Below, piece after piece: positions 10,849 through 42,545 of a DNA stretch of 64,000 bases (positions are counted from its first letter, which is position 1; every line of letters begins with the position of its first letter). Source of the stretch: Octopus sinensis. Lineage: Eukaryota. Made by a program: the position numbers and the translations under genes. Where the stretch lies: the NCBI RefSeq assembly GCF_006345805.1, contig NC_043004.1, forward strand, positions 102,858,001 through 102,922,000, read 5' to 3'. The notes below the pieces were generated by a model. It ran no database searches. It was not told the DNA's origin and was given only the letters and a program-made list of their open reading frames with translations.

Positions 10849-10971
10849 CGTTTTTTTGCGATCTTCTATCAGTTGAGCTACAAGCTCCTTGTGGGAAGGA
10901 TTGGGAAGCAGTTCTGGGACTACGATGTTCATTTGGCGTCTCATAATTTCGGAGGAATCTTCAAGCGGCAT
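10849..10971 (-). CDS. ODC1: ODC coding exon 1 (exon 10849-11004): MPLEDSSEIMRRQMNIVVPELLPNPSHKELVAQLIEDRKKT
   Basis: Acceptor catcttgctttcag before 11004; donor ACG|gtaagt, phase 0, matching the next exon. An in-frame TGA lies upstream of the first ATG. In-frame ATGs at 10971, 10944 and 10932; 10944 has the best context (A at -3). Confidence 0.88.
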
Positions 10972-11389
10972 AGAGAGGAGTGATCAAGTAATAATACAAA
11001 CAATCTGAAAGCAAGATGAAAAAAAATATTAAGATGGAAATACTTGAAGGAAATAGAAAAAAAGAAAGAAATTATTCTGAAATTTGAAAATGAGTAACAA
11101 AAAATTGGATTTATTCTTATTCCAATAAAACTGCATCGAAAATATTTCTGTTTGGGACCAGGAAAGTTGCAGTTTTTGTAATTGCTTACCCTCTCTGAAA
11201 TAAGACACAATGAAAATACTATTCACATATTTGGGATGATGAACTATTTAGCAGGATATATCTCTCTACTCAGACCAATCAGTTTTCTCTTATCAACCTT
11301 GCTGTGTCTCACTTTTCAGACCTGTGCTAAATGCTTCATCCAACCTACCATTTTTTTGGGAATCCCACCTTATTTTTCACATTTTGTCT

Positions 11390-11615
11390 TTAATTCTTTT
11401 GTTACTGTATTTATTTTGAGATGCTCTGTAGTTATTTCAATTACTTTAAATATAAAAGAATTTAGTAAAATAACTCAGTTATCATTCAGCTAGTGTTAGG
11501 AACATAAATTGTGGCTAAGGTTTGGTGGAAGATTTTAATTCAAAACTCATGTAAACAAGACATTTGTACTCAGAACTGAAGCCAGTTTCAGCCAGGTTGG
11601 TAACAAAAGGGTTAA
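11390..11615. mobile_element. piggyBac-like MITE, inverted relative to the 6762 copy
   Basis: The body is the reverse complement of 6762-6979. Ends AAAAGGG|TTAA, with a degenerate left TIR. Confidence 0.65.
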
Positions 11616-14517
11616 ACATCTCATCCAACAGATTTTCAAATTGAATATCTAAACTCTCTTAGTTGCTTCAGAGGTGGGCACTGCCACTAACAAATTATTC
11701 CTCTTACTGTGAGCTCTGCACAGTAACAAGTGAAGGTACCTGACCTTTCAAGGTCAACAACTCCAGTTCTGCTGTACCCCTACTCAATATTTGGTTTACC
11801 TTACTAAAACAGTAATTGCCTTTCTCACTGGACTAAGTTTCAACTGATATTAGGCAAATTTTCATCAGCTGGACATATAACAACTACTGCACAAGTTCAT
11901 TAAGGAGACATTTGCAGACAACTGGAAACTTCAAATCCACCCAATCTATGCAAATGTGAAATACAGACAGACATATTTTATATATAATGTCAATGTCTTA
12001 TTTCAGGATGTGTGTGCATTTTTTTTTTTTTGATAGAGATACGACAGCGAGACAAGAAAGACTAGATCAAAAGAAAAACAAGGTATTCATTTTATTGTTC
12101 TACATTGGCGAATAAAATGTTTAGCCTCCATCTAAGCAAAACAAATATATTATACAAGTTTTTTTTTTTGTTTGAAATTAGTTTCTATACTTTTCACCAG
12201 TATTTTTAATTGGTTTGACCCCCCAAAGAAAGAGTACTGCATATAGCTTTTGCAAGCTGTCACAAATTGATGAGATTGATGCTGCCTAGGCTCCTCTTGA
12301 ACAGCTTGCAAGCTGAAATCTGCATTTCCTGGAAAGCATGGAAATTCTAGAGAGGCAAGGACCAGGCATATTAGTAAGTGCAGGGCTTGCAGGAGAGATA
12401 CAACACAAGAAACCAAAGGAAGAAAAACGTGTGAGTGCCTGAATGAAGGTGATATAAAAATCAGTAAGCTGTGTGGAGAAGTCAATGTATTAAAGCAAGG
12501 ACACAGCACATCCATAAGCCAGAAGTTGCAGTGTAGTGTCAAGTGCAACTCCATGCCAATCAGCCGTGTGGTTTTTTGTGGGGAGGGAGGATGAAATCAA
12601 GAACATAGTGTGGCAGCAGCACCATCCCAGATGTGGGAATAGTATTCCCTTATGGATTTCATTAGAGCTTTGGAATCATTGGTTGTTGAGGAGCTGAAAT
12701 ATTATCAAATACTGAAGAGGAAGGCCAGTAATTGTGATGTAGTTTTTTTTCTATGTTGAGAGTGTGTGCAAATGCCAAGACAAATTTGTAGAAATGGTGA
12801 AGACTAGCTTTAGTAGTAACCTTGAGAGTTCTAATTATACGCCGTTCATGTTTAAGGATAGGCTACAATACTGTAATGATTGTGTCCCTGAAGGAGACAA
12901 AATTAGCATGATATCATTAGAGAGTGTTTTGAGGTCCCTATAAGGAAGTTGTCAAAACTGAATGTAAATGATGCTTGTTGTAAATGTTAAGCAAAACTGT
13001 AAGGTGCTGTAATCAGCATAAGAAATTTAGAGGTGATAGTAAGCTATACTTTGATGGATATAAGACAGAGTAGGGAGAAAAAGAAACATGAGGCATACCA
13101 GAGTTGATCAGAATGCAAATGTTTATGTGAGAGAGAGAGAGAAATACATTTCACAAAATTTCTAGCTGGCAGGTAAGAGGGGCTATGTTTCTTGATCAGG
13201 GGACACACTGTTGAATGCTTCTTAAGATTAGGATAGATATTTGTAGAGAGAGAGCAAGGTCAGAGGCTAAATTCAGGGCTTGTTTGAAGTAATTGGAAGT
13301 GCTTTTCCAATTGGTATGCATGTATCTGTGGTGATGGAGGGGCCTGGTGTACAAGCATGTGCAGTGGGGGAGCTGGATGCAAAGCAGCCAACAGAGGTAG
13401 AGCTTTTTCTAAGGAAGGACTACTTAAAAAAACCCCATCATTGTTGAAAAGTACAGGGATGGCAATACCTTTAAATTGGTAGACATTACTTTTGAAAGGA
13501 ATCAGAAAGAATGGCCGCAGTTCAGAGGCAACACATTTTAGAGCAGTGATACAGAGCAGGTATCTTTTGTATTTGGAGGATAGTTATGTGTAAGTTATGG
13601 TAATAGGTAAATGCCATCCTGTTTGTAGGGTAGGTGATTTTCTCCAAGTGTTGTAGGCTGTACTGTTTGTACAAGTAAAGTTTTGAGCAAAATGAACCAA
13701 CTGAAAGATTGGGTGATCTGATGGGTGCAGATGATGAAAAAGAGACCAAAAGTGTATGCTAAAGATCCACGTAGGAATAAACTAACTGTAAAGTGTTAAT
13801 TGCAAAAGAATTGGTTACTGCACTAATGAAGTCAATATGAAGTGTGTGAGAGAATCAGCCACAGATGGTTGAAGTGAGATAGATATCATTAATATGAGGA
13901 GAGCAACAGTGGTTGAAGGTGTTCAGAAAATGGTTAATGCAGCAGATATATTCAGAAGAGTGGAGGAGTGAGACTGAACCAAAGTAACTGGAAGACTTTG
14001 TTACAGCCATCAGAGTGAGACGTCAGAGGCAGAGAGAGCAAAGTCTATATTTGTAGAGAGACCACCATTTGAGTACCAAACTTCTTATTTCTCACCAAGA
14101 CTTAATTTTTTCATTCTTCGTATCCGAATCCATCTGGACAGCAAAAGAAGAATGAAAGAATTAAGTCTTGGTGAAAAATAAGAAGTTTGGTTTTTGTTAG
14201 GTGGTAGAGGGTCTAAATTGAATAAGAGTCCACAGATCTTAGGGAAGAGGGAGAAGGACTGTGTTCCATTTCAGTCAAGATATTTTAAGAGTGTAGCAGG
14301 TATTGGTCCACCATGTGGTCATGATACCACATCCTTGCTGAGAGTTTGACTCAAGTGGCTGTAATAGAGAACTGATTAATACGCTCACAGGCCTAAAGAT
14401 GGTATTATCCAGGAAGCAGAATAGGAGCTTTTACACATTTAACCAACCTTATGCCTCACAGGTAACAAAACCACACAAGAAAGTGCACAAAAATTTACAG
14501 GGTTAATTAAAAAGTAG

Positions 14518-14851
14518 TCATCATCATTGTTTAACGTCCGTTCTCCATGCTAGCATGGGTTGGACGGTTCGACCGGGGATCTGGGAAGCCAGAAGGCTGC
14601 ACCAGGCTCCAGTCTGATTTGGCAGTGTTTCTACAGCTGGATGCCCTTCCTAACGCCAACCACTCCGTGAGTGTAGTGGGTGCTTTTTACGTGCCAGGCA
14701 AGGATGGCAATGGCCACAATCGGATTGGTGCATTTTACGTGCCACCGGCACAGTAGCCAGTCAAGGTGGCGCTGGTATTGGCCACGATTCGGATGGTGCT
14801 TTTTACGTGCCACCGGCACGGAAGCCAGTCTAGGCGGCACTGGCAATCAGC
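14518..14851 (-). mobile_element. Family C repeat
   Basis: The + strand starts catcatcattgtttaacgtccg; two internal ~68-bp units. Confidence 0.85.
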
Positions 14852-16114
14852 CACAACAGTGTCAAAAGAAGCTTGATCAATAAGAGAGTGGGAAGGTGTG
14901 TATTGGGAAAGAAATCAGAGATTGAAGAAGTAAATAATAGAGACAGAAAGTGAAAAACGAAGGCTCATATTTGGTGATGTATACCAGCTAAAGATGTAGA
15001 TGTTATCTCTTACCTCCATTTCTGTCACACACACAACAAGCTTTGGCAGATTCCATCTACCATATTACAATGCAAGGTATTGGTGAAAATGAGGCACTCG
15101 TAGAAGACACTTGCCTCATGTGAGGTCCAACGGGACCAAACAAGACAATTACAAAGCAAACTTACAAACATACATTATGCTTGTGAAATTAATGACCAAG
15201 GGAGATCATCATCATTTAGCGTCCGCTTTCCATGCTAGCATGGGTTGGACAGTTCAACTGGAGTCTGGGAGGCCAGAAGGCTGCACCAGGCCCAGTCTGA
15301 TCTGGCAATGCTTCTACGGCTGGATGCCCTTCCTAACGCCAACCACTCCGTGAGTGTAGTGGGTGCTTTTTACATGTCAGACGGGGCTGGCAAACGGCCA
15401 CGGTCGGATGGTGCGTTTTACGTGCCACCGGCACAGTAGCCAGTCAAGGTGGCGCTGGTATTGGCCACGATTCGGATGGTGCTTTTTACGTGCCACCGGC
15501 ACGAAGCCAGTCTAGGCGGCACTGGCAATCAGCCACAACAGTGTCAAAAGAAGCTTGATCAATAAGAGAGTGGGAAGGTGTGTATTGGGAAGAAATCAGA
15601 GATTGAAGAAGTAAATAATAGAGACAGAAAGTGAAAAACGAAGGCTCATATTGGTGATGTATACCAGCTAAAGATGTAGATGTTATCTCTTACCTCCATT
15701 TCTGTCACACACACAACAAGCTTTGGCAGATTCCATCTACCATATTACAATGCAAGGTATTGGTGAAAATGAGGCACTCGTAGAAGACACTTGCCTCATG
15801 TGAGGTCCAACGGGACCAAACAAGACAATTACAAAGCAAACTTACAAACATACATTATGCTTGTGAAATTAATGACCAAGGGAGATCATCATCATTTAGC
15901 GTCCGCTTTCCATGCTAGCATGGGTTGGACGGTTCAACTGGAGTCTGGGAGGCCAGAAGGCTGCACCAGGCCCAGTCTGATCTGGCAATGCTTCTACGGC
16001 TGGATGCCCTTCCTAACGCCAACCACTCCGTGAGTGTAGTGGGTGCTTTTTACATGTCAGACGGGGCTGGCAAACGGCCACGGTCGGATGGTGCGTTTTA
16101 CGTGCCACCGGCAC
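14733..16114. repeat. Tandem duplication, period 680-683 bp, with breakpoints inside family C repeats
   Basis: 14733-15415 versus 15416-16114 are nearly identical; the ORF track also repeats at a +680 offset. Confidence 0.95.
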
Positions 16115-16146
16115 GGGGGGGCCAGGCGAGGCTGGCAACGGCCACG
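15885..16146 (-). mobile_element. Family C repeat (right parent of the duplication; chimeric copy at 15205-15531)
   Basis: Same head as the 15205 copy, with a different 3' continuation after gtgccaccggcac. Confidence 0.85.
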
Positions 16147-18119
16147 TTAAATAAAAAGTATACTGATAAGGTGAGAGAAACAAGTCATATGAATAATTCT
16201 CAATTAAAGCAATATATTCACAGATAATGTACCCCAAGCTTGAACATAAAGTGTAATCCATACTTCTTCAGAGACTGAAACATTCACTTCAATGAGAAAG
16301 CAGTCAAATATATATCCTAGTATCAACTAGATCAGGTGTAGAGAGCCTGCTGGCTTCTAAAGGGCTGGGCTAAGTGCAGCCATCTAAAAGAAGGCCAACG
16401 TCTGAGAAAATCCTTATACTGGTCTAAGTCTATTGATTTGATTTTATTTCAAGCCTACCCTTCCAACCAATTGCAAATTTTAGAACACTTATTTATACAT
16501 TTGTTTACATTAGTAGTTATTTGGTTAAAAATACAATTGTATTTAAAATCTAGAAAACTTAAAGAATTTGTTGGAAAAATGCCATGGATGTGTGTGCTTA
16601 TTTCAAAATTATTGTTTTTTCATATTTCATTAGAATTTTTATGCATATTTTATAAAATAATAGGTTTAGCACCACAAAAATTTTGAAATGTGAACTTGTC
16701 TGATGCAGCCTTCTAACATAAAAATGTTCCCTATCTCTGAACTTGGTAACAATTAATGGTTTCAAATTTTAACACAAGGCCTGCAATTTCAGGAGGAGGA
16801 GGGAAGGTCAATTACATCAACCCCTGAAAGGATGAAAGGCCAAGTCAACCTTAGTGGAATCTGAACTCAGAACATAAAGACAGATGAAAAGCCACAAAGC
16901 ATTTTGCCTGGTGTGCTAACAATTCTGCCAGCTCACCACCTTTGAACTTGGTGATAATTAGTGAAATATATCAAAGAGAGAGGAAGGAAATTGCTAAAGT
17001 TTCATATGCAATTCGTTCCACCTCTACTCCAGCACATGCAGAAAATAAAAATCTATTGTCTAAATTTGCAGTGCTTTACATATTGGCATAGGCTGGATGG
17101 GTTGTTACGGTCCAAATCCTTGTTTGAACTAACACCCTTTAAGCTCAGATAGGAGATAGCAGCTCTTTTGTCTCTTTTCAAATAAAGAAAACAAAACTTA
17201 TCCACCAGGAAAAATTAAAGGACTAGTGGCAAACATGTAAGGATATGGTATTTTGTTATGCAACCATAATACACTACAATGTACATTAAATGTTTCTGTA
17301 AGTCAATACCGTATTCTAGATGAAGCATGTCAGATATGAAACGTAACAAAATCAGTGCTGACTTTAATTTCTATAGAAAATCTGTAGAGATAACCCGAAC
17401 AAGTGTTGTAGCAATTATATATACAGAAATGTAGAATGCCTAGTAATGGAAAATAGAGGGACTAAGGGAGGAGTTCTAATAACCAAATGGTTAACATTGA
17501 CAAAGTACCTTCTTTCTGACTCGGATGAAGAGCTTCTGACATTGATAATGAATTCCTGATTCAGAGAACTGAGTTATCACAAAAACTCATGTATTTTTCA
17601 ACAGACAACTGTACAACAAACCTTGTGCAATATTAGCAATTACTATGTATAAATAAAATTGCAAAAAATTTCTAGCACTCAAGAAGATGCAGGTTTTAAG
17701 ATTTATCACCTCCTAGTGTGCTTGGTATTTGCAGAATAAAATCATTTTGGTAGAAAGCTGATTTACAAGTTGAAATGAAGAATAATATATAAAAATTAAA
17801 ATAACAAGGTAAATGTATGTGAAATTGTGTTTTAAGTATTAAAAAGAATGCTAAATAACACAAAATTTGTCCTAGACAGATCATTAATGTGATGAAAGAT
17901 GAGAAGAATTTCATATTGTACATGAATTTTTAACCAGTCATGATTGAAAGACAAGAGGAATGACTGATGGCAGTACGTTAAACAGTGTTTAGACTAACTC
18001 TTCAGCATTTAAACTTGCCATATACAATGTAAATATTCTACCTTGTTTTATGTTTAAACTGGCCAGATTCAGCCTCTTATGCATTCGCTATAATGTCATT
18101 TCGAAAATAAACACTCATC

Positions 18120-18452
18120 TTGACTGGCTTCCGTGTCGGTGGCACGTAAAAAGCACCATCCGAATCGTGGCCGAAGCCAGTGCCGCCTCGACTGGCTTCC
18201 GTGCAGGTGGCACGTAAAATGCACCAATCCAACCGTGGCCGATGCCAGCCTCGCCTGGCACCAGTGCAGGTGGCACGTAAAAAGCACCCACTACACTCAC
18301 GGAGTGGTTGGCGTTAGGAAGGGCATCCAGCTGTAGAAACATTGCCAGATAAGACCGGAGCCTGGTGCAGCCTTCTGACTTCCCAGATCCCCGGTCGAAC
18401 CGTCCAACCCATGCTAGCATGGAGAACGGACGTTAAACGATGATGATGATGA
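18120..18452 (+). mobile_element. Family C repeat, opposite orientation, (GAT)n tail
   Basis: Reverse complement of the 14518 copy. Confidence 0.85.
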
Positions 18453-19254
18453 TCATCATCATCGCAATCTTGAAGTTACAAGACAATACCTGGTCAACTG
18501 AATACAATATGAATAAATAAGCATTACATTTGACAGAGTAGTCAACCATATTATTCCTATTTAAACAAAGCCAGCTCATCTGTAGCATATTTCTGGTACC
18601 TGCTTCATTAACTCAAGAGTGATAACAGTTAAAGTCAGTTGCAGAGGAATAAGCAGTAGAGTCAAACACAGAATGAGGAGTACTACTAATCAGACACAAA
18701 CGAAAATGTGTATTCTGATGGGTTCAGATTTGTTGATACAGTATCTTTATGGTCAGATGCTTTTTCTGTTGCCAAACTTCATGTATTCCCAAGCAATCTA
18801 ATATTTTCCCCTAGTATGGACTGCAAACAAACACCACTGATTATGTGATGGTGAAATTTGTTTCTTATTAGAGTGCAATGTTAAGACAAGGAGACTCAGT
18901 CTCTGTCTTCGAAATTCACTATAATCATTAGTAAATAATTTAGTGGGTGTACTTAGGAATGGGATGCTACCAAGATTGTCCCAATCCTAGATTTGCTAAA
19001 GTAAAATTCTGGCGACATTCTAAACTTGAAAGAAAATTCGCTATTAGGTAAGGTATCCGAACAGTACTATAATCACATAGGCAAACATCTATACAATTAC
19101 CTGAAACAACTAGCATGGAGGAAGGAGTGTAAATTTGTAAAGAATACAAACTTATATTCATTTATCATGGAATATTACTAAATAGTATTTATTGTTGTAG
19201 AAACTGTTGCAGTAGAATTAAACTCTTCCTTTGGGAATATATTAATATATATTC

Positions 19255-19632
19255 AGGCGCAGGAGTGGCTGTGTGGTAAGTAGCTTGTTTACCAACCACG
19301 TGGTTCCGGTTCAGTCCCACTGCGTGGCACCGTGGCACCTGAGGCTACTATAGCCTCAGGCCGACCAAAGCCTTGTGAGTGGATTGGGTAGACGGAAACT
19401 GAAAGAAGCCCATCGTATATATGTATATATATGCGTGTGTGTGTTTGTCCCCCTAGCATTGCTTGACAACCGATGCTGGTGTGTTTATGTCCCCGTTACT
19501 TAGCGGTTCGGCAAAAGAGACCGATAGAATAAGTACCGGGCTTACAAAAGAATAAGTCCCGGGGTCGAGTTGCTCGATTAAAGGCGGTGCTCCAGCATGG
19601 CCACAGTCAAATGACTGAAACAAGTAAAAGAG
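19255..19632 (+). mobile_element. Family A tRNA-derived SINE, full length
   Basis: Head aggagtggctgtgtggtaag (A box) and ggttcagtccc (B box), internal (TA/GT)n, tail gcatggccacagtcaaatgactgaaacaagtaaaagag. Confidence 0.85.
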
Positions 19633-20140
19633 TTAAGAGATTCAAGGATATAGACATATATATGTAAACACATTACACGTACATAAATACATGCTTCACT
19701 ACAAATAAGTGTGTATATTTACAAGACTATAAAAGAAGTGTCTTTAAATGTATAAAAACATTGAATGAAGGACTCAATACATGTGCCAAGTCTATATTGA
19801 TAGCAACTTCAAACAATTTTGTGTGTGTGTGTGTGTAGACATATACACACAACTTTTATGCCTGCTCTCTCTGTTGGCAAGAGTCGGATGAATCATCACA
19901 ATATGAGTCAGTTCTTATACAACATTACTGCCTTTCCACACTGATCATGCCTCATTCCAGTTTTCTGTTTTGGCATTATTTCTACAGAAAGGGTGTCCTT
20001 CATAACATCAACCATTTCAAAGGGTGCTGGATGCACTTTATCATGGCACTGTACAGATGTCAAGTCTTCGAACAAATTTAAGAATCTTCTCTGCATTATC
20101 TCACTTTACAGAATATATTGAGTCCATCTTGTCATGGAAC

Positions 20141-20173
<33 letters not shown>

Positions 20174-20174
20174 C

Positions 20175-20393
20175 AAGGCAGCAAACTGGCAGAATCGTTG
20201 GTACACCAGGCAAAATACTTAATAATATTTCATCTGTCTTTTTTTTTTTTCTGAGTTCAAATTCTGCGGAGGTCGACTTTACCTTTCATCCTTTCAGGGT
20301 CAATATAACAACTACCAGCGGAACACTGGGGTTGATGTAATTGACTTAACCCCTCCCGTAAAATTTCAAGCCTTGTGCCTTTAGTAGAAAGGA
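20175..20393 (+). mobile_element. Family B SINE variant inserted next to a (TAT)n microsatellite (20140-20172)
   Basis: aaggcagcaaactggcagaatcgtt ... gagttcaaattctgcggaggtcgac. Confidence 0.75.
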
Positions 20394-20780
20394 TTATTAT
20401 CATCATCATCAAGTGTGCTTTGTGCTCTGCAGTGTCTTCATTCAGTCAAAGCAACATGACCGTGACCATGACAGAGAGAGTGAATAGAGGGTGGGGAATG
20501 AGGAGGGAAATTGTGGTTTAAAACAATGATAGAGGTGAGAGCATTGGAAAAGATACAAAATTGCAGTGAGAGTATGATGGAGAGAGAGAGAGTTCAGTGG
20601 ATGAGAAGGTAAGCTGGTTAGTGAAGGAGAGATTAGCAACAGATAAAAGTGTACCAGAGAGCTTAAAAAGAGAAATAAGCCCAAATGTAATAAGGAGAGG
20701 AGCAGCAGATGGTGGCTTAACAGAGATATACTAAATATATAGCTCAAAATGTAGACATAAATATCAAGTCACCATCACTA

Positions 20781-21630
20781 CATCATCATCGTTTAACGTC
20801 CGTTTTCCGCGCTAGCACGGGTTGGACGGTTCGACTGGGGTCTGGGAAGCCAAGAGGCTGCACCAGGCTCCAGTCTGATCTGGCAGTGTTTCTATAGCTG
20901 GATGCCCTTTCTAACGCCAACCACTCTGCGAGTGTAGTGGGTGCTTTTTACGTGCCAGGGGAGTCTGGCATCGGCCACGATCGGTTGGTGCTTTTAACGT
21001 GCCACCGGCACGGAAGCCAGTCGAGGTGGCACTGGCATCGGCCACGATTCGGATGGTGCTTTTTATGTGCCACCGGCACGGAAGCCAGTCGAGGCGGCTC
21101 TGGCATCGGCCATGATTCGGATGGTGCTTTTTATGTGCCACCGGCACAGAAGCCAGTCGAGGTGGCGCTAGCATCGGCCACGTTCAGATGGTGCTTTTTA
21201 TGTGCCACCGGCACAGGTATCACAACTACTATTTCCATTGATATTTATTTCGATGTTCATGTACTTGACTCAATAGGTCTCCTCAAGCACAGCGGGATGT
21301 TCTGGTATCCAAGGTAGTTTGAATGGGCAGGGGCTATCATAATGCTTACTATACCATCCTTGCATGGATGGGTGAGGGCCCTTCCTAGCAATGCATGCTA
21401 TCAACCATTAGTCCTTTGTCAGCTTTATGAGAATCACTCTCCTAATATCAATCTTCAATGTATCTCATGTCTTTCTAGGTCTCCCTTTTTCCACAGGTTC
21501 CATCCACGTCAAGTCATCTTTCATATGTACCACATGCCCATACCAATGTGCTCTTCCCTCTTGCACACTATATCTCTCTTTTTAACCATTTTGCCCCAGT
21601 TTCTTTGTGCTACATGGTTCATGTAATCTA
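20781..21630 (-). mobile_element. 5'-truncated RTE-like LINE remnant: degenerate ORF end plus family C 3' end with a four-unit 68-bp VNTR
   Basis: The reverse strand of about 21460-21620 encodes degenerate HWYGHVVHM ... GRPRKT, followed by family C sequence. Confidence 0.6.
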
Positions 21631-22676
21631 AAATTACAGAACAGAACATTGCTCACTACTTTTCTTTCTAGTCTTTGTAAATCCTCTGCATTCAAGCCCC
21701 ACATTTCACAACTGTTCAGTTTTTCTAGTTTACACTCAAGCACAATACAATTTGCTTTTTAATCAGAGAAAAATCGCCTTTTGTTTTGTTTTGTTTGTGT
21801 GTTTATGTCATTTTTATTTTTACATCCATTTTTTTTTTCCATACAGGTTTGAATTTGACAAGTTATTGAGAGAGTATTCTACAACTCTTTCAGTAACCAA
21901 CATTCATTTTGCAAGGTATTTTTATTCCACTATCTTCACGTATAATAAAACCATCCACAAGGCATATTGGTTATGAAAAAATGTAAATGATGTAACCACG
22001 TCTGTGTCACACACAGACACACACATAGCTGGCTTCTGTATAATTTCTATCAACCAAATTGATTTAGTTTTGACAGGTGGGGTAGGGGTGAAGGTAGTTG
22101 AAAAATGCTTATCACATGACTTATGTTAAATATTTATTTTTATTTTTCATTAGAGGTTATTTCAACATCTGCAACTCTTGTCTGTGTATGTATAGGAGTG
22201 ATGCATATGTGGAAGTGATGTGTGTGACTGTGTAGAAGTAGTTAAGACAACAAACTGGTGGAGTTGTTAGAACAATGAATAGCATATCCTGCAGTGTTTG
22301 TTCTGGTTATCTGCATGCTGGAGTTCAAATTCAATCTAAGTTAGCTGTGCTTTCTATGCTTTTTGGGGTTGATAATATAAAGTATCTCAGTATCTCAGCA
22401 GATTGCATTGGTCTTTGCTCATCTCATGGGAAACATTAGTCACAGGATGAATGGGTCTACCACTAGAAACATTATCTAGGAGACCTAGGCTTTGAGAAAA
22501 ACTTTCCAAGCACAATCCAGTCTCATGAGATACAGTCTGTGCACGTATGAGTGTGTGTGTGTATATATATATAGGGAGAATTCACACAAAAACCCCCCAC
22601 AAAAAACAAAAGACGAAGACAGGTAGTGTAGACAACAAACAGATGTATTAGTTTAACGCTTGGGAAGTGAAAAAGT

Positions 22677-22712
22677 CTTTAATGTTTCGAGCCTATGCTC
22701 TTCCACAGAAAG
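22677..22712 (-). ncRNA. Decayed minimal hammerhead ribozyme motif (Penelope-type)
   Basis: cttt-CTGTGGA-A-GAGC-atag-GCTC-GAAAC-ATT-aaag: stems I and II intact, core A6 and the ACGT palindrome mutated. Confidence 0.45.
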
Positions 22713-23333
22713 GAACAGAGAGAGAAAAAAAAAGAATGTGTAGTGGCCAGCGATCTATCATGGCAAATGCCAGACAGAGAGATAAAAAGCAGAAAGTACA
22801 AAAAAGTTCAAAGTTCAAATGTTGTGGTGTATTGGAGCGATACGATGGACGTTAAAAGATGGTGAGATATATACATACATATAAAAATTTGTTGATTGTG
22901 ACCAAGTTCCACCCGAGGGTTTATACAACTGTGCGAGTGTGTATCTGCCTGTGTAGGAGTGTCTACATTTATTGCTATGTATATCAGTTAATGTGCGCAG
23001 TATGTATATGTGTACAGATGTATCTGTATATATACATAAATACTTATATGACTTTACAGTAGACTGAGGCTCAATTAAATAGATCAGAGTTCAATACATT
23101 ACATAGAGTATATATATTGAGTTATTAAGTTGAAGATCTCATTTGAAATTTTGGCTGGTATGCTTAGACCAAATCATTGCCTTTTATTTGCATATATAAA
23201 AACACAGACAGACATACATAAATTGTTTGGTGTGGAGGTAGAGGTATACATGCACACATACACATAAATCTATATGCTTTAGTTAAGTGAGAGATTCAAT
23301 GATCTCATTCATTTTGCAATAATCTCATTAAGA

Positions 23334-24080
23334 TCATCATCATCATCATCATCGTTTAGCGTCCGCTTTCCATGCTAGCATGGGTTGGACGGTTCTACTG
23401 GGGTCTGTGAAGCCAGAAGGCTTCATCAGGCCCAGTCAAATCTGGCAGTGTTTCTACGGCTGGATGCCCTTCCTAACGCCAACCACTCCGTGAGTGTAGT
23501 GGGTGCTTTTTACGTGCCACCCGCACTGGTGCCAGACAGAGCTGGCAAACGGCCACGAACGGATGGTGCTTTTTATGTGCCACCGGCACGAGGGCCAGGC
23601 GAGGCTGGCAACGGACACGAAACAGGGCGGTGCTGGCAACGGTCGTGAAATGGAAAGTTCTCTTACATGCCACCGGCACTGGTAACACATCTGCAATTTC
23701 CATTGATCGATTTCGATTCTGATCGTCACTTGCCTCAACGGGTCTTCACAAGCAGAGTTTTGACATGCCACCAGCACTGGTAGCACATCCGCAATTTCCA
23801 TTGATCGATTTCGATTCTGATCCTCACTTGCCTCATCACGTCTTCACAAGTAGAGTTTTGTGTCCCAAGAAGGGAAGGTATGCATACGTAGGCTGGCTCC
23901 ATCCCATGTAGAAGGCCACGGGTTATGGACTCACTTGTCCTGCCGGGTCTTCTCGCGCACAGCACACTTCCAGAGGTCTCGGTCTCTAGTCATTTCCTCA
24001 GTGAGACCTAAAGTTCGAAGGTCGTGCTTCACCACCTCGTCCCAGGTTTTCCTGGGTCTGCCTCTTCCACAGGTTCCCTC
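23334..24080 (-). mobile_element. 5'-truncated RTE-clade LINE: ORF C-terminus, 3' UTR (family C) and (GAT)n tail
   Basis: EGTCGRGRPRKTWDEVVKHDLRTLGLTEEMTRDRDLWKCAVREKTRQDK* (TGA 23933-23931) is a typical RTE C-terminus. An internal ~98-bp tandem duplication lies at 23668-23860. Confidence 0.85.
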
Positions 24081-24241
24081 AGGTTCCCTAAAGATCTATT
24101 TACAAATGTGAAAACATGGTTTCGTTACAAGTATGAAGAAAACGAGGTAGAAAAATTATAAATGATGAAATGAAAAGTCTGAAAACCCTTGATTTACTAA
24201 TAAAACATCTCAAACAACAAATGTGTAATATAGCATCTTAC

Positions 24242-24376
24242 CTGGCCAATAGGAACACCTGCACTCAGCCGATGCTAGCTGGGATCCCACGGTGGCTCTG
24301 CGTTGAAGTTGAATTTCCGCTTGAAACGGCAGAAGCCTTCGGGATTTTCTATGTAATAAAGACCAGAACAGCCGCC
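24242..24376 (-). other. ODC 5'-leader exon carrying the 3' part of the uCC uORF
   Basis: Acceptor ttttcttgtcttttttcag, donor CAG|gtaaga. Unique GC-richer sequence in AT-rich intron. Confidence 0.9.
24275..24376 (-). CDS. Regulatory uORF (uCC), 3' part: GGCSGLYYIENPEGFCRFKRKFNFNAEPPWDPS*
   Basis: Read directly from the sequence. EPPW-x-PS-stop is the C-terminal signature of the uCC of ODC/AZIN mRNAs. PPW at 24295-24287, TAG at 24277-24275. Confidence 0.9.
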   Translation of the reverse strand, partial: GGCSGLYYIENPEGFCRFKRKFNFNAEPPWDPS

Positions 24377-27993: not shown

Positions 27994-28980
27994 TTAAACC
28001 AATAGTGCTTCTTTGTTGAAATTGGAAACTAGAGAGAATTAGGAGAAAAGCAGGATTCCCAGTTTCTACTAAGACAAACAAAGGATGATGTGTGAGTATA
28101 TATATATATATATATATGAAGTGAACAGAAGGAAGAGATTGCACATATCAAAAATGATCAGAGAGAATTCTAAGACAACGAGGGAAAATAAAAGTACTAG
28201 AATTTATTTAATTAAATTAAAACTCTTCAAAGTGTTGCTCTACCATGGCTGCAGTCTAACAGGTAAAAAAATGCGAGATTTGGCCTTGATTGTTTTTTTG
28301 CGTGTGTGTGTAATAATACATTTAGGACCACATCATTCAATATACAGTTTCGTTTTTGAGATGGCAGGATATAATTAAGATTTGACTGATCTTTCTAGCA
28401 GATCAAGCAAACTCGTAAGCTCTTGCTTTGGTTAGTTTTGGCTACAAGCTATGTAAAATTTTAATAGAATAGAACTATCTTGTAGATTGTGAATTACATT
28501 TCAGTTGCACATGGTTACCTCTTCTTAACTACTAAGTCTAACTTAATAAAATAAATGACTGAGGTTATAATTAGAGATACTATCTGAAAGAAAAAAGAAT
28601 TTCATTGTGAAAAATCTAATCAGAAATACTATGCTGTGAGTGGAGGGGGAGAAGACTTCACTGTTGTTGATATTAATCCATCTAAGAATTTAGAACAAGT
28701 ATTATTAATGAGTCAGTTATAGACACTATTTTACAGAAATAAAGAAAATTCATCCAAAATAATTCTATTTGATGTTTAGAAAAAACAATATTCATTTCTT
28801 ACAATGTATATATAAAAACAAAATGGTTGATTGAGAGAAATAAAAGCTACATAACTCACAATAGGAATCTATTGTAAGCTATGTATCTTAATTAACAATC
28901 CACTACCACCATGGTGAACACCATAGGGAAAGAGGTAAGCTTCCAGCAAACTGAAACCATATAGAATTCACTTCACTTAC

Positions 28981-29162
28981 ACTACTAAGCTTTTTGGAGA
29001 GGACTTTTGTGCCTAGTCAAAAAGTAAAGCGATATTTCATCACGTCTTGCGTTAGCTGCTGCAGAAGTTCCATCTTTTCCTTCGTCTTTAAGCCCCAACT
29101 ACCACCTGGTGCCTGGTGATGAATAGAGAGCTTTGGCCGTGCGTAAATGGCAAGTACAGAAG
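28981..29162 (-). other. Candidate alternative 5'-leader exon of ODC containing an AUG uORF MELLQQLTQDVMKYRFTF* ending in UGA-CUAG
   Basis: Acceptor ctgtttgtattttccatactctctgcag, donor AGT|gtaagt. 182 nt of unique sequence. ATG at 29073 (aagATGg), TGA at 29019-29017. The frame continues open to the donor and joins exon 24376 in the uCC frame. Confidence 0.55.
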
Positions 29163-30655
29163 CTGCAGAGAGTATGGAAAATACAAACAGGTAGAGATGT
29201 GGAAGTTACCAAATCTATCAACTTTCAAGCAAAAGCAAAATTACAAGTATATATATTTCATTTTCCCCTACATCTCACAAACGAATCCCAACAAAATTGT
29301 CTGCTAAACTGATTCATAAGTCATGCTGTATGTATACATACATATATATATATATATAATATATATATATATATTATATATATATATATAATATATATAT
29401 ATATATGTACACACACACACACACACACAGCACGGTACATTTGGTTTCTTTCACTGGCTATGCTATTCTCTGATAAAGATTACAAAACAATAAGACAAAT
29501 ACAAAGTGAGTGCATTTCCCTGATAATTCACAATTGAAATCACTGCCTACATTTTGTTTTAATAGATAATATTAAAACTGTGATTGCACAATATTCTGAA
29601 ATAGCTTACTTGATATGATAATCGTGCATATATACTTTACATATAAACTATTACTATGTATTCAACACAGTCCTTCATGAAAATACCAAAGTCTTCCCAA
29701 TATTCCATATTCCTAGCCCACTTACACATCAAAGACTTATGCCTCATAAGGCATAAGTCTTTCACATTAAGACCTATGCCTTATGAAAAACTATTGCTGC
29801 TTTTAAATCTGCAGTACTGCCTAAGTCATTAGATTTTAGGTAATTGCCACCTTATGAGGTAAGTGTGGCAGAAGAAAAGGAAAAATACACATCTACAAAA
29901 TTCCTTCACAATATCAATGCTAACTTCTAAAAATCACTCTCAGCTAATTCATTTGAAACTTACAACTATAACACTACTACAATGAATATAAACTAGATCT
30001 TTAAAATATAGTTTTAAAAAGCAATATTTACATAAAGCAAAAGTAGAAAATATTTTATATTCTAGGTTTAATTACATTGGTTTACTGAGATACCATGAAA
30101 GTACCCTGTACAAAACTTTTATCGGAAACACGCTATGGACCCTAACACTGTTACTTTGTGTAACCATTGTTCCTACCTTATCATACTTGAACAAGCTGTT
30201 GCTATTGAAAAATTGAAATTCCAACCATCAACAGTGGAAGAGCAACAAGTGGTCTATTCAAAATTACAGAAAGAAAAACAGCAATGGACCCAGTAATAGG
30301 ATGGTAGGGTAAGAAACGGGCAGTGCAAATTCAGCATGTACACGCTTCTAAGTGGTACTAAGAGTACTAACGTAATAGTATACACAATCATTTTGAAAAC
30401 TTACAAATTTTGATTGATGGTCATTGTTTCGACCCAGGTCATATCTGAAGAAGCAGATCTGACAAAAGGCAATCTAGCCATAACAGTTCTGTCTTTCTTC
30501 ATCAAACTATTTTATCTAATGTGTTCCTCCATTTTTAAAGACACTAGGAGGCTTGGTAGTTAAATTTAGCAGATCGAGAGCTTTCAACTTGTGAATGTTG
30601 TTGGCTCTAAAAAATGTGATTTGATAAGGACGGAGTAAAGGGCCAAAAGAAACTT

Positions 30656-41335: not shown

Positions 41336-41383
41336 CTGAACAGAAGCTCCACAACCGTTCTCCTTACTGTTTTTCCCCGGAAT
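41336..41383 (-). CDS. Regulatory uORF (uCC), 5' part, AUU-initiated: (I/M)PGKNSKENGCGASVQ
   Basis: ggcaag ATT CCG, with A at -3. Exactly 16 codons to the donor, phase 0, matching the phase-0 acceptor at 24376. Confidence 0.8.
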
Positions 41384-41515
41384 CTTGCCGATTGTGGACT
41401 AACACATTAAAGCATAATACAGCCAAAGGAAGAGTTGAGACACCGGCGTAAGAAAGAAAAACGTAATTGATTTGCCTTCGACTTCCTATCAGTGTGTGAC
41501 ACCGGTGAAATAGGC
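41336..41515 (-). other. Distal first exon of ODC (5' end approximate)
   Basis: Donor CAG|gtaaat at 41335. Contains the AUU-CCG uCC start. TATATAAG about 30 nt upstream of the inferred 5' end. An alternative TTAGT initiator-like site lies at about 41400. Confidence 0.75.
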
Positions 41516-41536
41516 TGCGCACAGGTCATGGAAAAT

Positions 41537-41544
41537 CTTATATA
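41537..41544 (-). promoter_or_regulatory. TATA box (TATATAAG) of the putative distal ODC promoter
   Basis: Lies 28-33 nt upstream of initiator-like adenines (CTATTTC at 41511), within CpG-containing sequence. Confidence 0.45.
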
Positions 41545-42445
41545 CGACGCCGCGCATGTATACAAATGTGAGTAGTCTAGCGGAAGAACAAAGTGATTTA
41601 GCGGGGGGTGTAGGAGATTAAAACATAGATCTGAGAGAAATTTAGAAAAATATTAAAACGAGAGAATGCTGATAAAAGTTCTAACAGGTAAAAGTAATCG
41701 TAAAAGAAATTAAAAGCTTACGATGCATTGCACTACGAGACTATAAGCGTGGTTATGTATGTAATAATGTGCTACTTTTCTCTCTTTCTCACTTACTCCT
41801 TTTCTTTCTTATCTCATTAGCTGTCTGTCTCTCTCTCTTATCTCATTAGCTGTCTGTCTGTCCTCTCTCTCTTTATCCCATTGTGTTCTTCCTCATTTTT
41901 TTTTTTCTCTTTATGTCTTTCTACATTTCTCTCTCTCTCTAGCTTCCTCGTTTTTCTCTCTTCCGGTCTCTCTTAAACACACACACACACACACACACAC
42001 TCTCTCTCTCTTTCTCTCTACTTTGATCTTAGACTTTAAAATTTCCTCTTCTCCCTCTTTCCCTCCTTCCTCTCACTCTTTCTCCTTTTCCTTCCCTCTC
42101 TCTCTTCCCCTCTCTCTCTTCCCCTCTCTCTCTTCCCCTCTCTCTCTTCCCCTCTCTCTCTTCCCCTCCCTCTCTCTCTCTTTATAATAATTCGGCTTTT
42201 CTTCTCCCAATTCAGATGTCCCTCCTTATCTCACTTATAACACTCTACAATCTCCCTTCTCTGCATCGGTCACTTCTGGTACACTGCCGCTTTCTCGACC
42301 TTTTTCATTCCGCTCCCTCCCTCTGTTTCTCCTAGTAAATACTTGTATACATTATTTTACACATGCATACACAAACACAAACACACATGTAATAATATCA
42401 ATAAATTATGAATTAATATAATTTCAATGATACACGCAAATACAT

Positions 42446-42545
42446 NNNNNNNNNNNNNNNNNNNNNNNNNNNNNNNNNNNNNNNNNNNNNNNNNNNNNNN
42501 NNNNNNNNNNNNNNNNNNNNNNNNNNNNNNNNNNNNNNNNNNNNN
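42446..42545. other. Assembly gap (100 N) flanked by microsatellites
   Basis: Run of N. Confidence 1.

What the first reader, a model, noticed from the sequence alone, without database searches (positions are those of the whole stretch)
28981..29162. Candidate readthrough-gated entry into the ODC polyamine-sensing uORF (AUG...UGA-CUAG...PPW)
Seen: an exon-shaped segment with a good acceptor and a gtaagt donor inside ODC intron 1. It has a strong-context AUG (aagAUGg, 29073) and a second AUG (29040). Both are in the frame that, after splicing to 24376, encodes NAEPPWDPS*. The only block is one UGA (29019-29017) followed by CUAG. After it the frame is open for 45 codons (LGTKVLSKKLSS|GGC...PPWDPS*), with no AUU start. 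If the exon follows the distal exon 1, the AUU uORF stops early at TAA and never reaches PPW. Established: UGA-CUAG is the leaky-stop context of AQP4, OPRL1, MDH1 and LDHB; known uCCs are gated by a weak non-AUG start. Inference: this isoform would swap a leaky start for a leaky stop. Termination after 18 codons would permit reinitiation at ODC, while readthrough would deliver ribosomes to the PPW/PS-stop stall and repress ODC. Readthrough could be polyamine- or eIF5A-sensitive, or come from A-to-I editing UGA to UGG, although a 5' G disfavours editing. I know of no description of this arrangement. Exon inclusion itself is unproven.
Basis: partly seen in the sequence, partly recalled or inferred. 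Interest (0 to 1): 0.9.

Follow-up and report, generated by a model that had tools for sequence, protein, structure and literature searches.

The report
Conserved leaky-stop exon in octopus ODC leader
A 182-base exon-like segment in the octopus ornithine decarboxylase 5' leader is kept almost unchanged in the distant octopod Argonauta, and it places an AUG-started mini-ORF, ended by the leaky stop context UGA-CUAG, in frame with the gene's polyamine-sensing peptide, so stop-codon readthrough may replace the usual weak AUU start, although no RNA or translation data yet show this.

Summary
On the minus strand, 29162-28981 has a good acceptor and a GTAAGT donor. AUG 29073 (aagAUGg) and AUG 29040 share one frame. 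After 18 codons comes UGA (29019-29017) followed by CUAG. Twelve open codons then join in frame to the uCC exon (24376-24242, ...NAEPPWDPS*).

New evidence: Argonauta hians has the same element. Introns of the two species do not align and third codon positions of ODC are 75% identical, yet this exon is about 91% identical. Acceptor, donor, both AUGs, the 18-codon length and TGACTAG are all kept. The only indel after the AUG is 3 nt; a 2-nt indel lies before it. The segment is single-copy, matches no Rfam family and looks coding on neither strand.

Squid RNA contigs show the canonical leader: exon 1 with the AUU start spliced directly to the uCC exon. The segment is therefore an optional cassette that breaks the AUU frame.

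RNA evidence for its inclusion is only indirect. My reading is a conserved regulatory 5'-UTR cassette (about 0.8). Readthrough-gated entry to the PPW sensor is the favoured but untested mechanism (about 0.4). A plain AUG-uORF switch is the main rival (about 0.35).

The parts
41336..41560 (-). Distal exon 1 of ODC. The 3' end is defined; the TSS was not mapped, so 41560 is approximate. It carries the canonical uCC start AUU at 41383-41381 (aagAUUc) and ends ...TTCTGTTCAG|gtaaat.
   Evidence: sequence; orthologous squid exon 1 (...AAGATTCCGGG...TTCTGTTCAG) is spliced directly to the uCC exon in RNA contigs, with the AUU in frame.
29163..29262 (-). Conserved intronic flank upstream of the cassette, with polypyrimidine tract and AG acceptor (29164-29163).
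   Evidence: 80.6% identity to Argonauta against 38-49% just outside; acceptor ...TTTTCCATACTCTCT(G/A)CAG kept.
28981..29162 (-). Candidate cassette exon of the 5' leader. It is 182 nt in Octopus and 177 nt in Argonauta.
   Evidence: about 91% identical to Argonauta; single copy in the 2.72-Gb genome; no Rfam family; splice sites like those of real ODC exons.
29088..29090 (-). TAA that ends the AUU-initiated frame when the cassette follows exon 1. Argonauta has a TGA a few codons earlier.
29020..29073 (-). AUG uORF of 18 codons (MELLQQLTQDVMKYRFTF). AUG1 is 29073-29071 (aagAUGg) and AUG2 is 29040-29038 in the same frame.
   Evidence: Both AUGs and the length are kept in Argonauta. The peptide is not conserved: 5 substitutions, none at a third position, 4 codons changed and all nonsynonymous.
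29013..29019 (-). Stop codon UGA (29019-29017) plus CUAG (29016-29013), the high-readthrough context.
   Evidence: Identical in Argonauta within a 25-nt invariant block. The motif is described in PMC12233894 and PMC4359377.
28981..29016 (-). Post-stop stretch of 12 stop-free codons (LGTKVLSKKLSS) ending at the donor, in phase with the uCC exon.
   Evidence: In Argonauta there are 11 codons, one substitution that is synonymous in this frame, and a 3-nt deletion.
28937..28980 (-). Donor GTAAGT and conserved downstream intronic flank.
   Evidence: 88.6% identity.
24242..24376 (-). uCC exon. It holds 33 sense codons, GGCSGLYYIENPEGFCRFKRKFNFNAEPPWDPS. PPW is at 24295-24287 and the TAG stop at 24277-24275. 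A further 33 nt of leader follow.
   Evidence: RNA contigs; 98.7% nucleotide identity to Argonauta; the only copy in the genome.
10849..11004 (-). Exon carrying the main ODC AUG (10971-10969). In the cassette isoform that AUG lies 204 nt after the UGA, with no other AUG between.

Best explanation
Segment 29162-28981 is a conserved, optionally included 5'-UTR cassette exon of the octopod ornithine decarboxylase gene. It lies between exon 1, which carries the weak AUU start of the polyamine-sensing uCC, and the uCC exon.

Inclusion rewires the leader in three ways:
1. The AUU frame runs into a stop inside the cassette, so the normal entry to the sensor is cut off.
2. Two in-frame AUGs, the first in a strong context, load most scanning ribosomes onto an 18-codon uORF whose peptide does not matter.
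3. That uORF ends at UGA-CUAG, in frame with the rest of the uCC and with no further stop.

Most ribosomes would terminate there and could reinitiate at the ODC AUG 204 nt downstream. A small fraction would read through, translate 45 more codons and reach PPW...PS-stop. When polyamines are high they would stall there and block the subunits travelling to the ODC start. A leaky stop would thus deliver the low, tunable flux that the leaky AUU delivers in the canonical isoform.

Shown: the anatomy, its conservation, and the canonical isoform in RNA. Inferred: exon inclusion, readthrough, the stall and the repression.
For: 1. The exon is under strong purifying selection. In Octopus versus Argonauta only exons align, and ODC third codon positions are 74.8% identical. 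The cassette is 90-97% identical by segment, while its far flanks are at random level.
2. Acceptor, GTAAGT donor, both AUGs, the 18-codon length, TGACTAG and the frame into the uCC are all kept in Argonauta.
3. Indel pattern: a 2-nt indel before the AUG and a 3-nt indel after the stop. The single post-stop substitution is synonymous in the uCC frame only.
4. For a given uORF stop, the chance of being TGA-CTAG, in frame and followed by 12 open codons is about 1.5e-4.
5. No coding pattern on either strand, no Rfam family and no repeat explains the conservation.
6. The canonical exon 1 to uCC splicing and the in-frame AUU are seen in squid RNA contigs. This makes the segment a cassette, not a constitutive exon.
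7. Indirect RNA hints. Both octopod RNA contigs and one squid contig begin exactly at the first base of the uCC exon. In a de Bruijn assembly this requires an upstream partner whose last base is not G. Exon 1, the intron and the 33021 candidate all end in G; the cassette ends in T. Separately, NCBI lists four accessions for O. bimaculoides isoform X1 and two for O. sinensis isoform X1, each set with one protein sequence, which would fit alternative 5' UTRs.
8. UGA CUA G is the established high-readthrough context (PMC12233894, PMC4359377).
9. The uCC mechanism is established: a weak AUU start and a C-terminal PP...PS needed for polyamine repression (PMC2811004).
10. In the same pathway, AMD1 already couples readthrough to a downstream arrest (PMC13025110).
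Against: - No RNA contig or read with the cassette could be retrieved.
- None of the 30 squid contigs contains it.
- Only two species could be compared. The exon is so conserved overall that retention of a 7-nt motif is expected about half the time or more.
- The 3-nt indel sits in an AGTAGT repeat, where slippage would give 3 nt anyway.
- The base before the UGA is U, which lowers readthrough in mammalian reporters.
- The motif has not been tested in molluscs.
- No stimulatory structure is predicted.
- The hypothesis was formed after seeing the sequence.
Confidence: 0.4

Rival explanations
1. Plain uORF switch. The cassette is a real alternative 5'-UTR exon, but its only function is to disconnect the AUU from the uCC and insert a strong AUG uORF. 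The isoform is then translated by reinitiation or leaky scanning. ODC synthesis is lowered, or made sensitive to eIF2 status, and escapes polyamine sensing. The in-frame position and the UGA-CUAG context are coincidences, and any readthrough is noise.
For: Conserved AUGs and uORF length with an unconserved peptide are typical of barrier uORFs. The AUU frame is closed inside the cassette in both species. The uORF is short and lies 204 nt from the main AUG with no intervening AUG, which favours reinitiation. The overall nucleotide conservation of the exon explains retention of TGACTAG without any special selection. U at -1 argues for modest readthrough.
Against: It must accept a coincidence of about 1.5e-4, kept across a divergence at which third codon positions are only 75% identical. 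It gives no reason for the frame-preserving indel, or for the post-stop 36 nt being the best conserved part of the exon at 97%.
Confidence: 0.35
2. Not an exon. The 345-nt conserved block is an intronic regulatory DNA or RNA element, such as an enhancer, an alternative promoter, a splicing or antisense element, or an unannotated ncRNA. The splice-site-like ends and the ORF features would then be incidental.
For: Conservation runs about 100 nt beyond the acceptor and about 44 nt beyond the donor, so the conserved block does not stop at the exon ends. No cassette-containing RNA was retrieved. Squid transcripts lack it.
Against: Conserved flanks are usual for regulated cassette exons (general knowledge). 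Identity peaks inside the splice-site-bounded part. Acceptor tract, AG and GTAAGT are all kept. There are only two AUGs, both in one frame. No Rfam match and no structure signal were found. The contig breaks at the uCC exon boundary need an upstream partner ending in a base other than G.
Confidence: 0.13
3. The sensor in the cassette isoform is entered by another route than readthrough. One route is A-to-I editing of UGA to UGG. Another is near-cognate initiation downstream of the stop, for example at the conserved in-frame AUA in the uCC exon, or at AAG.
For: Cephalopods edit RNA extensively (general knowledge). An in-frame AUA (codon 9 of the uCC exon) is conserved in octopods and squids.
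Against: The edited A would have a 5' G and a 3' C, a poor ADAR context. Only a small local hairpin is predicted. The AUA has U at -3, and it encodes a conserved residue, so its conservation says nothing about initiation. Reinitiating subunits use near-cognate codons poorly (general knowledge).
Confidence: 0.05

Closest known systems
uCC (upstream conserved coding region) of ODC homologues and AZIN1 (Ivanov, Atkins and colleagues; review PMC2811004)
   Same: It is the same gene family and the same sensor. The conserved peptide in the 5' leader ends ...PPW..PS-stop. Entry of only a small fraction of ribosomes is the regulated step, and the read-out is repression of the main ORF. The window's canonical isoform (AUU 41383 + uCC exon) is an ordinary member, confirmed by squid RNA contigs.
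   Different: In the cassette isoform the weak AUU start is out of frame and closed by a stop. Entry would be through a leaky stop after a strong AUG uORF, and it would be switched on by alternative splicing. None of the papers I could search describes this.
AMD1 stop-codon readthrough with C-terminal tail arrest (PMC13025110; Yordanova et al. 2018, from my own knowledge)
   Same: It is in the polyamine pathway. A small fraction of ribosomes read through a stop and then arrest at the next in-frame stop, so that stalled ribosomes limit further translation.
   Different: AMD1 readthrough is at the main-ORF stop and the arrest is in the 3' UTR. Here both would lie in the 5' leader, upstream of the regulated ORF. 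The arrest peptide is the uCC PPW...PS motif, not the AMD1 tail.
Functional readthrough at UGA-CUAG (AQP4, MDH1, LDHB, OPRL1; PMC4359377, PMC12233894)
   Same: The stop codon and the four following bases are identical, and an open, conserved in-frame extension follows.
   Different: Those cases extend a protein to add a targeting or functional tail, and they are in vertebrates. Here the product would be a regulatory nascent peptide, the stop belongs to a uORF, the organism is a mollusc, and the -1 base is U.
Alternative 5'-UTR exons that add or remove uORFs
   Same: An optional non-coding exon with conserved splice sites and conserved intronic flanks changes the uORF content of the leader.
   Different: Here the added uORF is in frame with a pre-existing sensor peptide and is separated from it only by a leaky stop.
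Antizyme +1 frameshifting (PMC1874602)
   Same: It is a polyamine-sensed recoding event at a UGA stop codon in the same homeostatic circuit.
   Different: That event is frameshifting, not readthrough. It lies in the main ORF and synthesises a protein; it does not deliver a ribosome to an arrest site.

Membership tests
ODC/AZIN1 uCC | Conserved coding region in the 5' leader of an ODC homologue, ending with adjacent prolines and a terminal Pro-Ser before the stop | tested here: met
   ...NAEPPWDPS* at 24376-24275, upstream of an ODC ORF. The peptide is identical in Argonauta and near-identical in squids.
ODC/AZIN1 uCC | [quoted passage not shown] | tested here: met
   This holds for the canonical isoform. 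aagAUUc at 41383 is in frame through the exon 1/uCC junction, and the same codon is present in 27 squid RNA contigs.
ODC/AZIN1 uCC (cassette isoform) | Entry by an in-frame non-AUG start | tested here: not met
   With the cassette included, the AUU frame ends at TAA 29090-29088. No AUU, CUG, UUG, GUG or ACG lies in frame between the UGA and the PPW. The cassette isoform works like a uCC leader but lacks this defining feature.
ODC/AZIN1 uCC | Polyamine-dependent repression that needs the C-terminal peptide | not testable with these tools
   Needs reporters with or without spermidine or DFMO.
High-readthrough stop context (UGA CUA G) | UGA followed by CUAG | tested here: met
   29019-29013, identical in Argonauta.
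High-readthrough stop context (UGA CUA G) | Favourable upstream context (purine at -1) | tested here: not met
   The context is UUU UGA, so the -1 base is U. [quoted passage not shown]
Functional (programmed) readthrough | In-frame extension kept open across species, with frame-preserving indels | tested here: inconclusive
   The extension is open in both species, with one 3-nt indel and one synonymous change. There are only two species and the indel lies in a trinucleotide repeat.
Functional (programmed) readthrough | Measured readthrough product or footprints | not testable with these tools
   No Ribo-seq, mass spectrometry or reporter data were available.
Alternatively spliced cassette exon | Conserved acceptor and donor with conserved intronic flanks | tested here: met
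Alternatively spliced cassette exon | Both inclusion and skipping junctions seen in RNA | tested here: inconclusive
   Direct exon 1 to uCC splicing (skipping) is seen in squid RNA contigs. Inclusion was not seen directly. The only hints are the contig breaks at the uCC exon boundary and several accessions per protein isoform at NCBI. Look-ups for cassette ORFs found nothing.
AMD1-type readthrough-then-arrest | Leaky stop followed by an in-frame arrest peptide at the next stop | tested here: met
   This is met at the level of sequence arrangement only: UGA-CUAG, 45 codons, PPWDPS-stop. The arrest itself was not tested.

The most novel reading that the evidence does not exclude
In octopods, alternative splicing converts the ODC leader from a leaky-start gate to a leaky-stop gate. 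Programmed readthrough of a uORF stop codon (UGA-CUAG), possibly stimulated by polyamines, feeds ribosomes into the uCC arrest peptide. This would be the first case of stop-codon readthrough used inside a 5' leader to deliver ribosomes to a metabolite-sensing stall site.
Probability: 0.35. Interest if true: 0.85.

Novelty: new variant of a known kind. Interest (0 to 1): 0.7.

Why it matters
The uCC is a model for how a small metabolite controls start-site choice through ribosome queuing. All known uCCs are thought to be entered through a weak start codon.

If a conserved splice isoform enters the same sensor through a leaky stop codon, three things follow. First, the low-flux gate and the sensor would be separable modules. 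Second, functional readthrough would extend from protein tails to 5'-leader regulation. Third, a third recoding event (after antizyme frameshifting and AMD1 readthrough) would join the polyamine circuit.

It would also give a clean natural test of whether polyamines act on termination as well as on elongation. Even if readthrough proves irrelevant, the element is a previously undescribed, deeply conserved regulatory exon in the leader of a rate-limiting enzyme.

Tried and rejected
Repeat or transposon: rejected. The 345-nt block is single-copy in the 2.72-Gb assembly.

Known ncRNA (snoRNA or miRNA) in the intron: rejected. The cassette has no Rfam match. The only hits are far below gathering scores and lie in the neighbouring TA-rich low-complexity stretch 29322-29438.

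Conserved RNA structure or readthrough stimulator: no signal. The fold z-score is +1.25 and no pair covaries. A small hairpin, CUUUUUG...CAAAAAG, embraces the stop, but it is not significant.

Protein-coding exon on either strand: rejected. All six frames have stops and mostly nonsynonymous changes.

Enrichment of TGACTAG in the window: none.

RNA evidence via protein look-ups: failed. The junction peptide and the cassette ORF found no candidates in the protein database; short ORFs seem not to be held there. Exact look-ups of two cassette-internal ORFs found nothing.

O. bimaculoides orthologue: the fetched locus L003 ends about 110 nt short of the uCC exon. That genome cannot be searched here.

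A second uCC or ODC paralogue in the genome: none found.

It does not align to Argonauta within the 2.7 kb available upstream of the cassette. It also ends in G, so it cannot explain the contig breaks.

A paper on cephalopod ODC leaders or on uORF readthrough: none found.

Full report
LOCUS

The gene lies on the minus strand. ORFs at about 10970, 10195-10098, 8929-8852, 6547-6374, 5705-5568, 4633-4459, 3295-3132 and 1096-970 encode ornithine decarboxylase. The residues match the Octopus sinensis/vulgaris form (Ile in ...AFTICN..., Ser in ...PPSDY...). The window is contig C8:102,858,001-102,922,000 of a 2.72-Gb assembly. The main AUG is at 10971-10969 in exon 11004-10849.

The exon 24376-24242 ends the upstream conserved coding region (uCC): GGCSGLYYIENPEGFCRFKRKFNFNAEPPWDPS, then TAG. 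Two octopod RNA contigs show this exon spliced directly to the AUG exon: L001, whose ORF equals an O. bimaculoides isoform, and L002, closest to the Callistoctopus minor protein.

THE OBSERVATION

- The acceptor is ...ctctctgcag|CTTCTG at 29162 and the donor is AGTAGT|gtaagt after 28981.
- AUG 29073 sits in aagAUGg. A second AUG at 29040 is in the same frame.
- Eighteen codons are followed by UGA at 29019-29017 and then CUAG.
- Twelve further stop-free codons join in phase to the uCC exon, giving 45 open codons ending PPWDPS-stop.
- If the segment follows distal exon 1, the AUU frame ends at TAA 29090-29088.
- One small correction: the uCC exon ends at 24242, not 24241.

The splice sites are as good as those of the mapped ODC exons.

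THE CANONICAL LEADER

Thirty RNA contigs from what appear to be two decapodiform species were fetched through their ODC proteins. Of these, 27 carry the AUU of exon 1 and two shorter ones still carry the junction. In all 29, an exon ending ...AAGATTCCGGG...TTCTGTTCAG is spliced straight to GGCGGCTGTTC.... The remaining contig, L012, starts at the first base of the uCC exon.

That exon is the orthologue of the window's distal exon 1 (41336 donor). Its AUU (aagAUUc, 41383-41381 in the window) is in frame with the uCC. This is the textbook arrangement: a conserved AUU in good context and a terminal PP...PS required for polyamine-dependent repression (PMC2811004). The finding's segment is therefore not constitutive. 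If used, it is a cassette between exon 1 and the uCC exon.

CONSERVATION: THE MAIN NEW RESULT

The ODC locus of Argonauta hians (L004) aligns with the window only at exons and dispersed repeats. ODC coding identity between Argonauta and O. bimaculoides is 93%, 94% and 75% at codon positions 1, 2 and 3. Neutral sites are therefore well diverged.

In the 9.4 kb upstream of the Argonauta uCC exon, exactly one block aligns: L004:2698-3030 with window 29281-28937. Identity by segment:

| Segment | Identity |
|---|---|
| Far flanks | 38-49% (random) |
| 100 nt before the acceptor | 81% |
| Exon before the AUG | 90%, plus a 2-nt indel |
| uORF | 91% |
| TGACTAG | 100%, inside a 25-nt invariant block |
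| 36 nt after the stop | 97%, plus a 3-nt deletion |
| 44 nt after the donor | 89% |

Argonauta keeps the acceptor, GTAAGT, both AUGs, the 18-codon length, UGA-CUAG and the frame. Its spliced sequence reads MEREQQLTQDEMKYCFTF*LGTKVLSKKLSGGCSG...PPWDPS*.

The uORF peptide itself is not conserved. There are five substitutions, none at a third position, and all four changed codons are nonsynonymous. No frame on either strand looks coding.

Other explanations for the conservation do not hold. The block is single-copy, matches no RNA family and has no structural signal. Conserved splice sites with conserved intronic flanks are what regulated cassette exons look like.

IS IT INCLUDED IN RNA?

I could not show this directly. 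The protein database does not hold such short ORFs. Exact look-ups of cassette ORFs found nothing. The O. bimaculoides locus I could fetch stops about 110 nt short of the uCC exon. Two indirect hints remain.

First, both octopod RNA contigs and one squid contig begin exactly at the first base of the uCC exon. In a de Bruijn assembly a contig starts at the first base shared by all incoming paths. A partner ending in another base is needed, and the cassette ends ...AGT. This is an inference about assembler behaviour, not a read count.

Second, NCBI lists four accessions for O. bimaculoides isoform X1 and two for O. sinensis isoform X1, each set sharing one protein sequence. That would fit alternative 5' UTRs.

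HOW IT WOULD WORK

Inclusion closes the AUU frame inside the cassette in both species: TAA in Octopus and TGA in Argonauta, 15 and 21 nt before the AUG. The strong AUG, backed by a second in-frame AUG, should capture most scanning ribosomes.

After 18 codons they meet UGA-CUAG, the established high-readthrough context (PMC4359377, PMC12233894). Terminating ribosomes have 204 AUG-free nucleotides in which to reacquire initiation competence before the ODC AUG. Ribosomes that read through are carried into the PPW...PS-stop sensor with nothing in their way.

The flux expected from such a stop is a few percent or less. I recall that being of the same order as initiation at a good-context AUU. In the same pathway, AMD1 couples readthrough to a downstream arrest (PMC13025110).

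I also note that the UGA lies 40 codons (39 in Argonauta) before the first proline, while the AUU lies 43 codons before it in the canonical isoform. I attach no weight to this without experiments.

WEIGHING

For one uORF stop, the probability of being TGA-CTAG (0.001), in frame (1/3) and followed by 12 open codons (0.475) is about 1.5e-4. The motif is not enriched in the window as a whole, and the hypothesis was made after looking, so this figure must be discounted.

The Argonauta comparison adds only modest weight to the readthrough part. The motif sits in a very conserved exon, the 3-nt indel is in an AGTAGT repeat, and there is a single synonymous change. U at -1 argues for modest efficiency. 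Nothing is known about this motif in molluscs.

My estimates:
- Genuine conserved regulatory exon: about 0.8.
- Full readthrough-gate model: about 0.4.
- Plain AUG-uORF switch that merely disables the uCC: about 0.35.
- Non-exonic conserved element: about 0.13.
- Editing or near-cognate entry: about 0.05.

COMPARISON WITH KNOWN SYSTEMS

The canonical isoform is an ordinary uCC leader. The cassette isoform fails one defining feature of the uCC, the non-AUG start, while keeping the sensor. It therefore works like a uCC without being a standard one.

It shares its stop context with the vertebrate functional-readthrough genes and its logic with AMD1. It differs from all of these in placing both the readthrough and the arrest in the 5' leader, under control of splicing. 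I found no description of such an arrangement in the searchable literature. I class it as a new variant of a known kind.

Noticed in passing
window 24242-24376 vs L004:9393-9527: The uCC exon is 98.7% identical at the nucleotide level between Octopus and Argonauta. That includes third codon positions and the 33 non-coding bases after its stop. It is far above the ODC coding exons (82-93%), so the constraint goes beyond the peptide.
   Followed up: partly
window 10849-24241 vs L004:9528-9973: The intron between the uCC exon and the AUG exon is about 13.2 kb in Octopus but only about 450 nt in Argonauta. The Octopus intron is filled with dispersed repeats.
   Followed up: no
window 14855-15206 and 15537-15886: A tandem duplication with a period of about 680 bp lies in that intron. 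Both copies match a single O. bimaculoides segment (L003:5947-6298, 92%), so the duplication appears to be specific to this lineage.
   Followed up: no
window ~9100, 14600, 15300, 16000, 18200-18400, 20900, 23450, 27200, 30750 (both strands): Many copies of one short interspersed repeat occur here. Their ORF translations read ...RQPLRECSGCFLRATGT... or ...DALPNANHSVSVVGAFYVP.... The repeat is also present in the O. bimaculoides and Argonauta loci.
   Followed up: no
window ~42440-42540: A run of N (assembly gap) lies just upstream of ODC exon 1, flanked by CT/TC-rich low-complexity sequence at 41800-42200. The promoter region may therefore be incomplete.
   Followed up: no
window 41409-41401; L018-L027 around position 68: Exon 1 carries its own small AUG uORF upstream of the AUU, out of frame with it. 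In Octopus it is the minimal AUG-CUU-UAA. In the two squid leaders it is an 8-codon or a 10-codon ORF.
   Followed up: partly
L012, L001, L002 (first base): A squid RNA contig also starts exactly at the first base of the uCC exon, as both octopod contigs do. This hints that decapodiforms too have an alternative upstream partner ending in a base other than G.
   Followed up: no
P0121/P0125 vs P0126/P0124 (ODC proteins): The octopus ODC isoforms differ by a 9-residue insert (VCSSWNKDK) after ...VFPSVIQ, which looks like a coding micro-exon. Its exon lies at or beyond the low end of the window.
   Followed up: no
L028-L034 (P0131, 473 aa): The 473-residue squid 'ODC' is a gene-caller artefact. 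The ORF was started at a TTG upstream of the real AUG, which adds MARLFVLSRSLLS to the normal MPLEG... start.
   Followed up: partly
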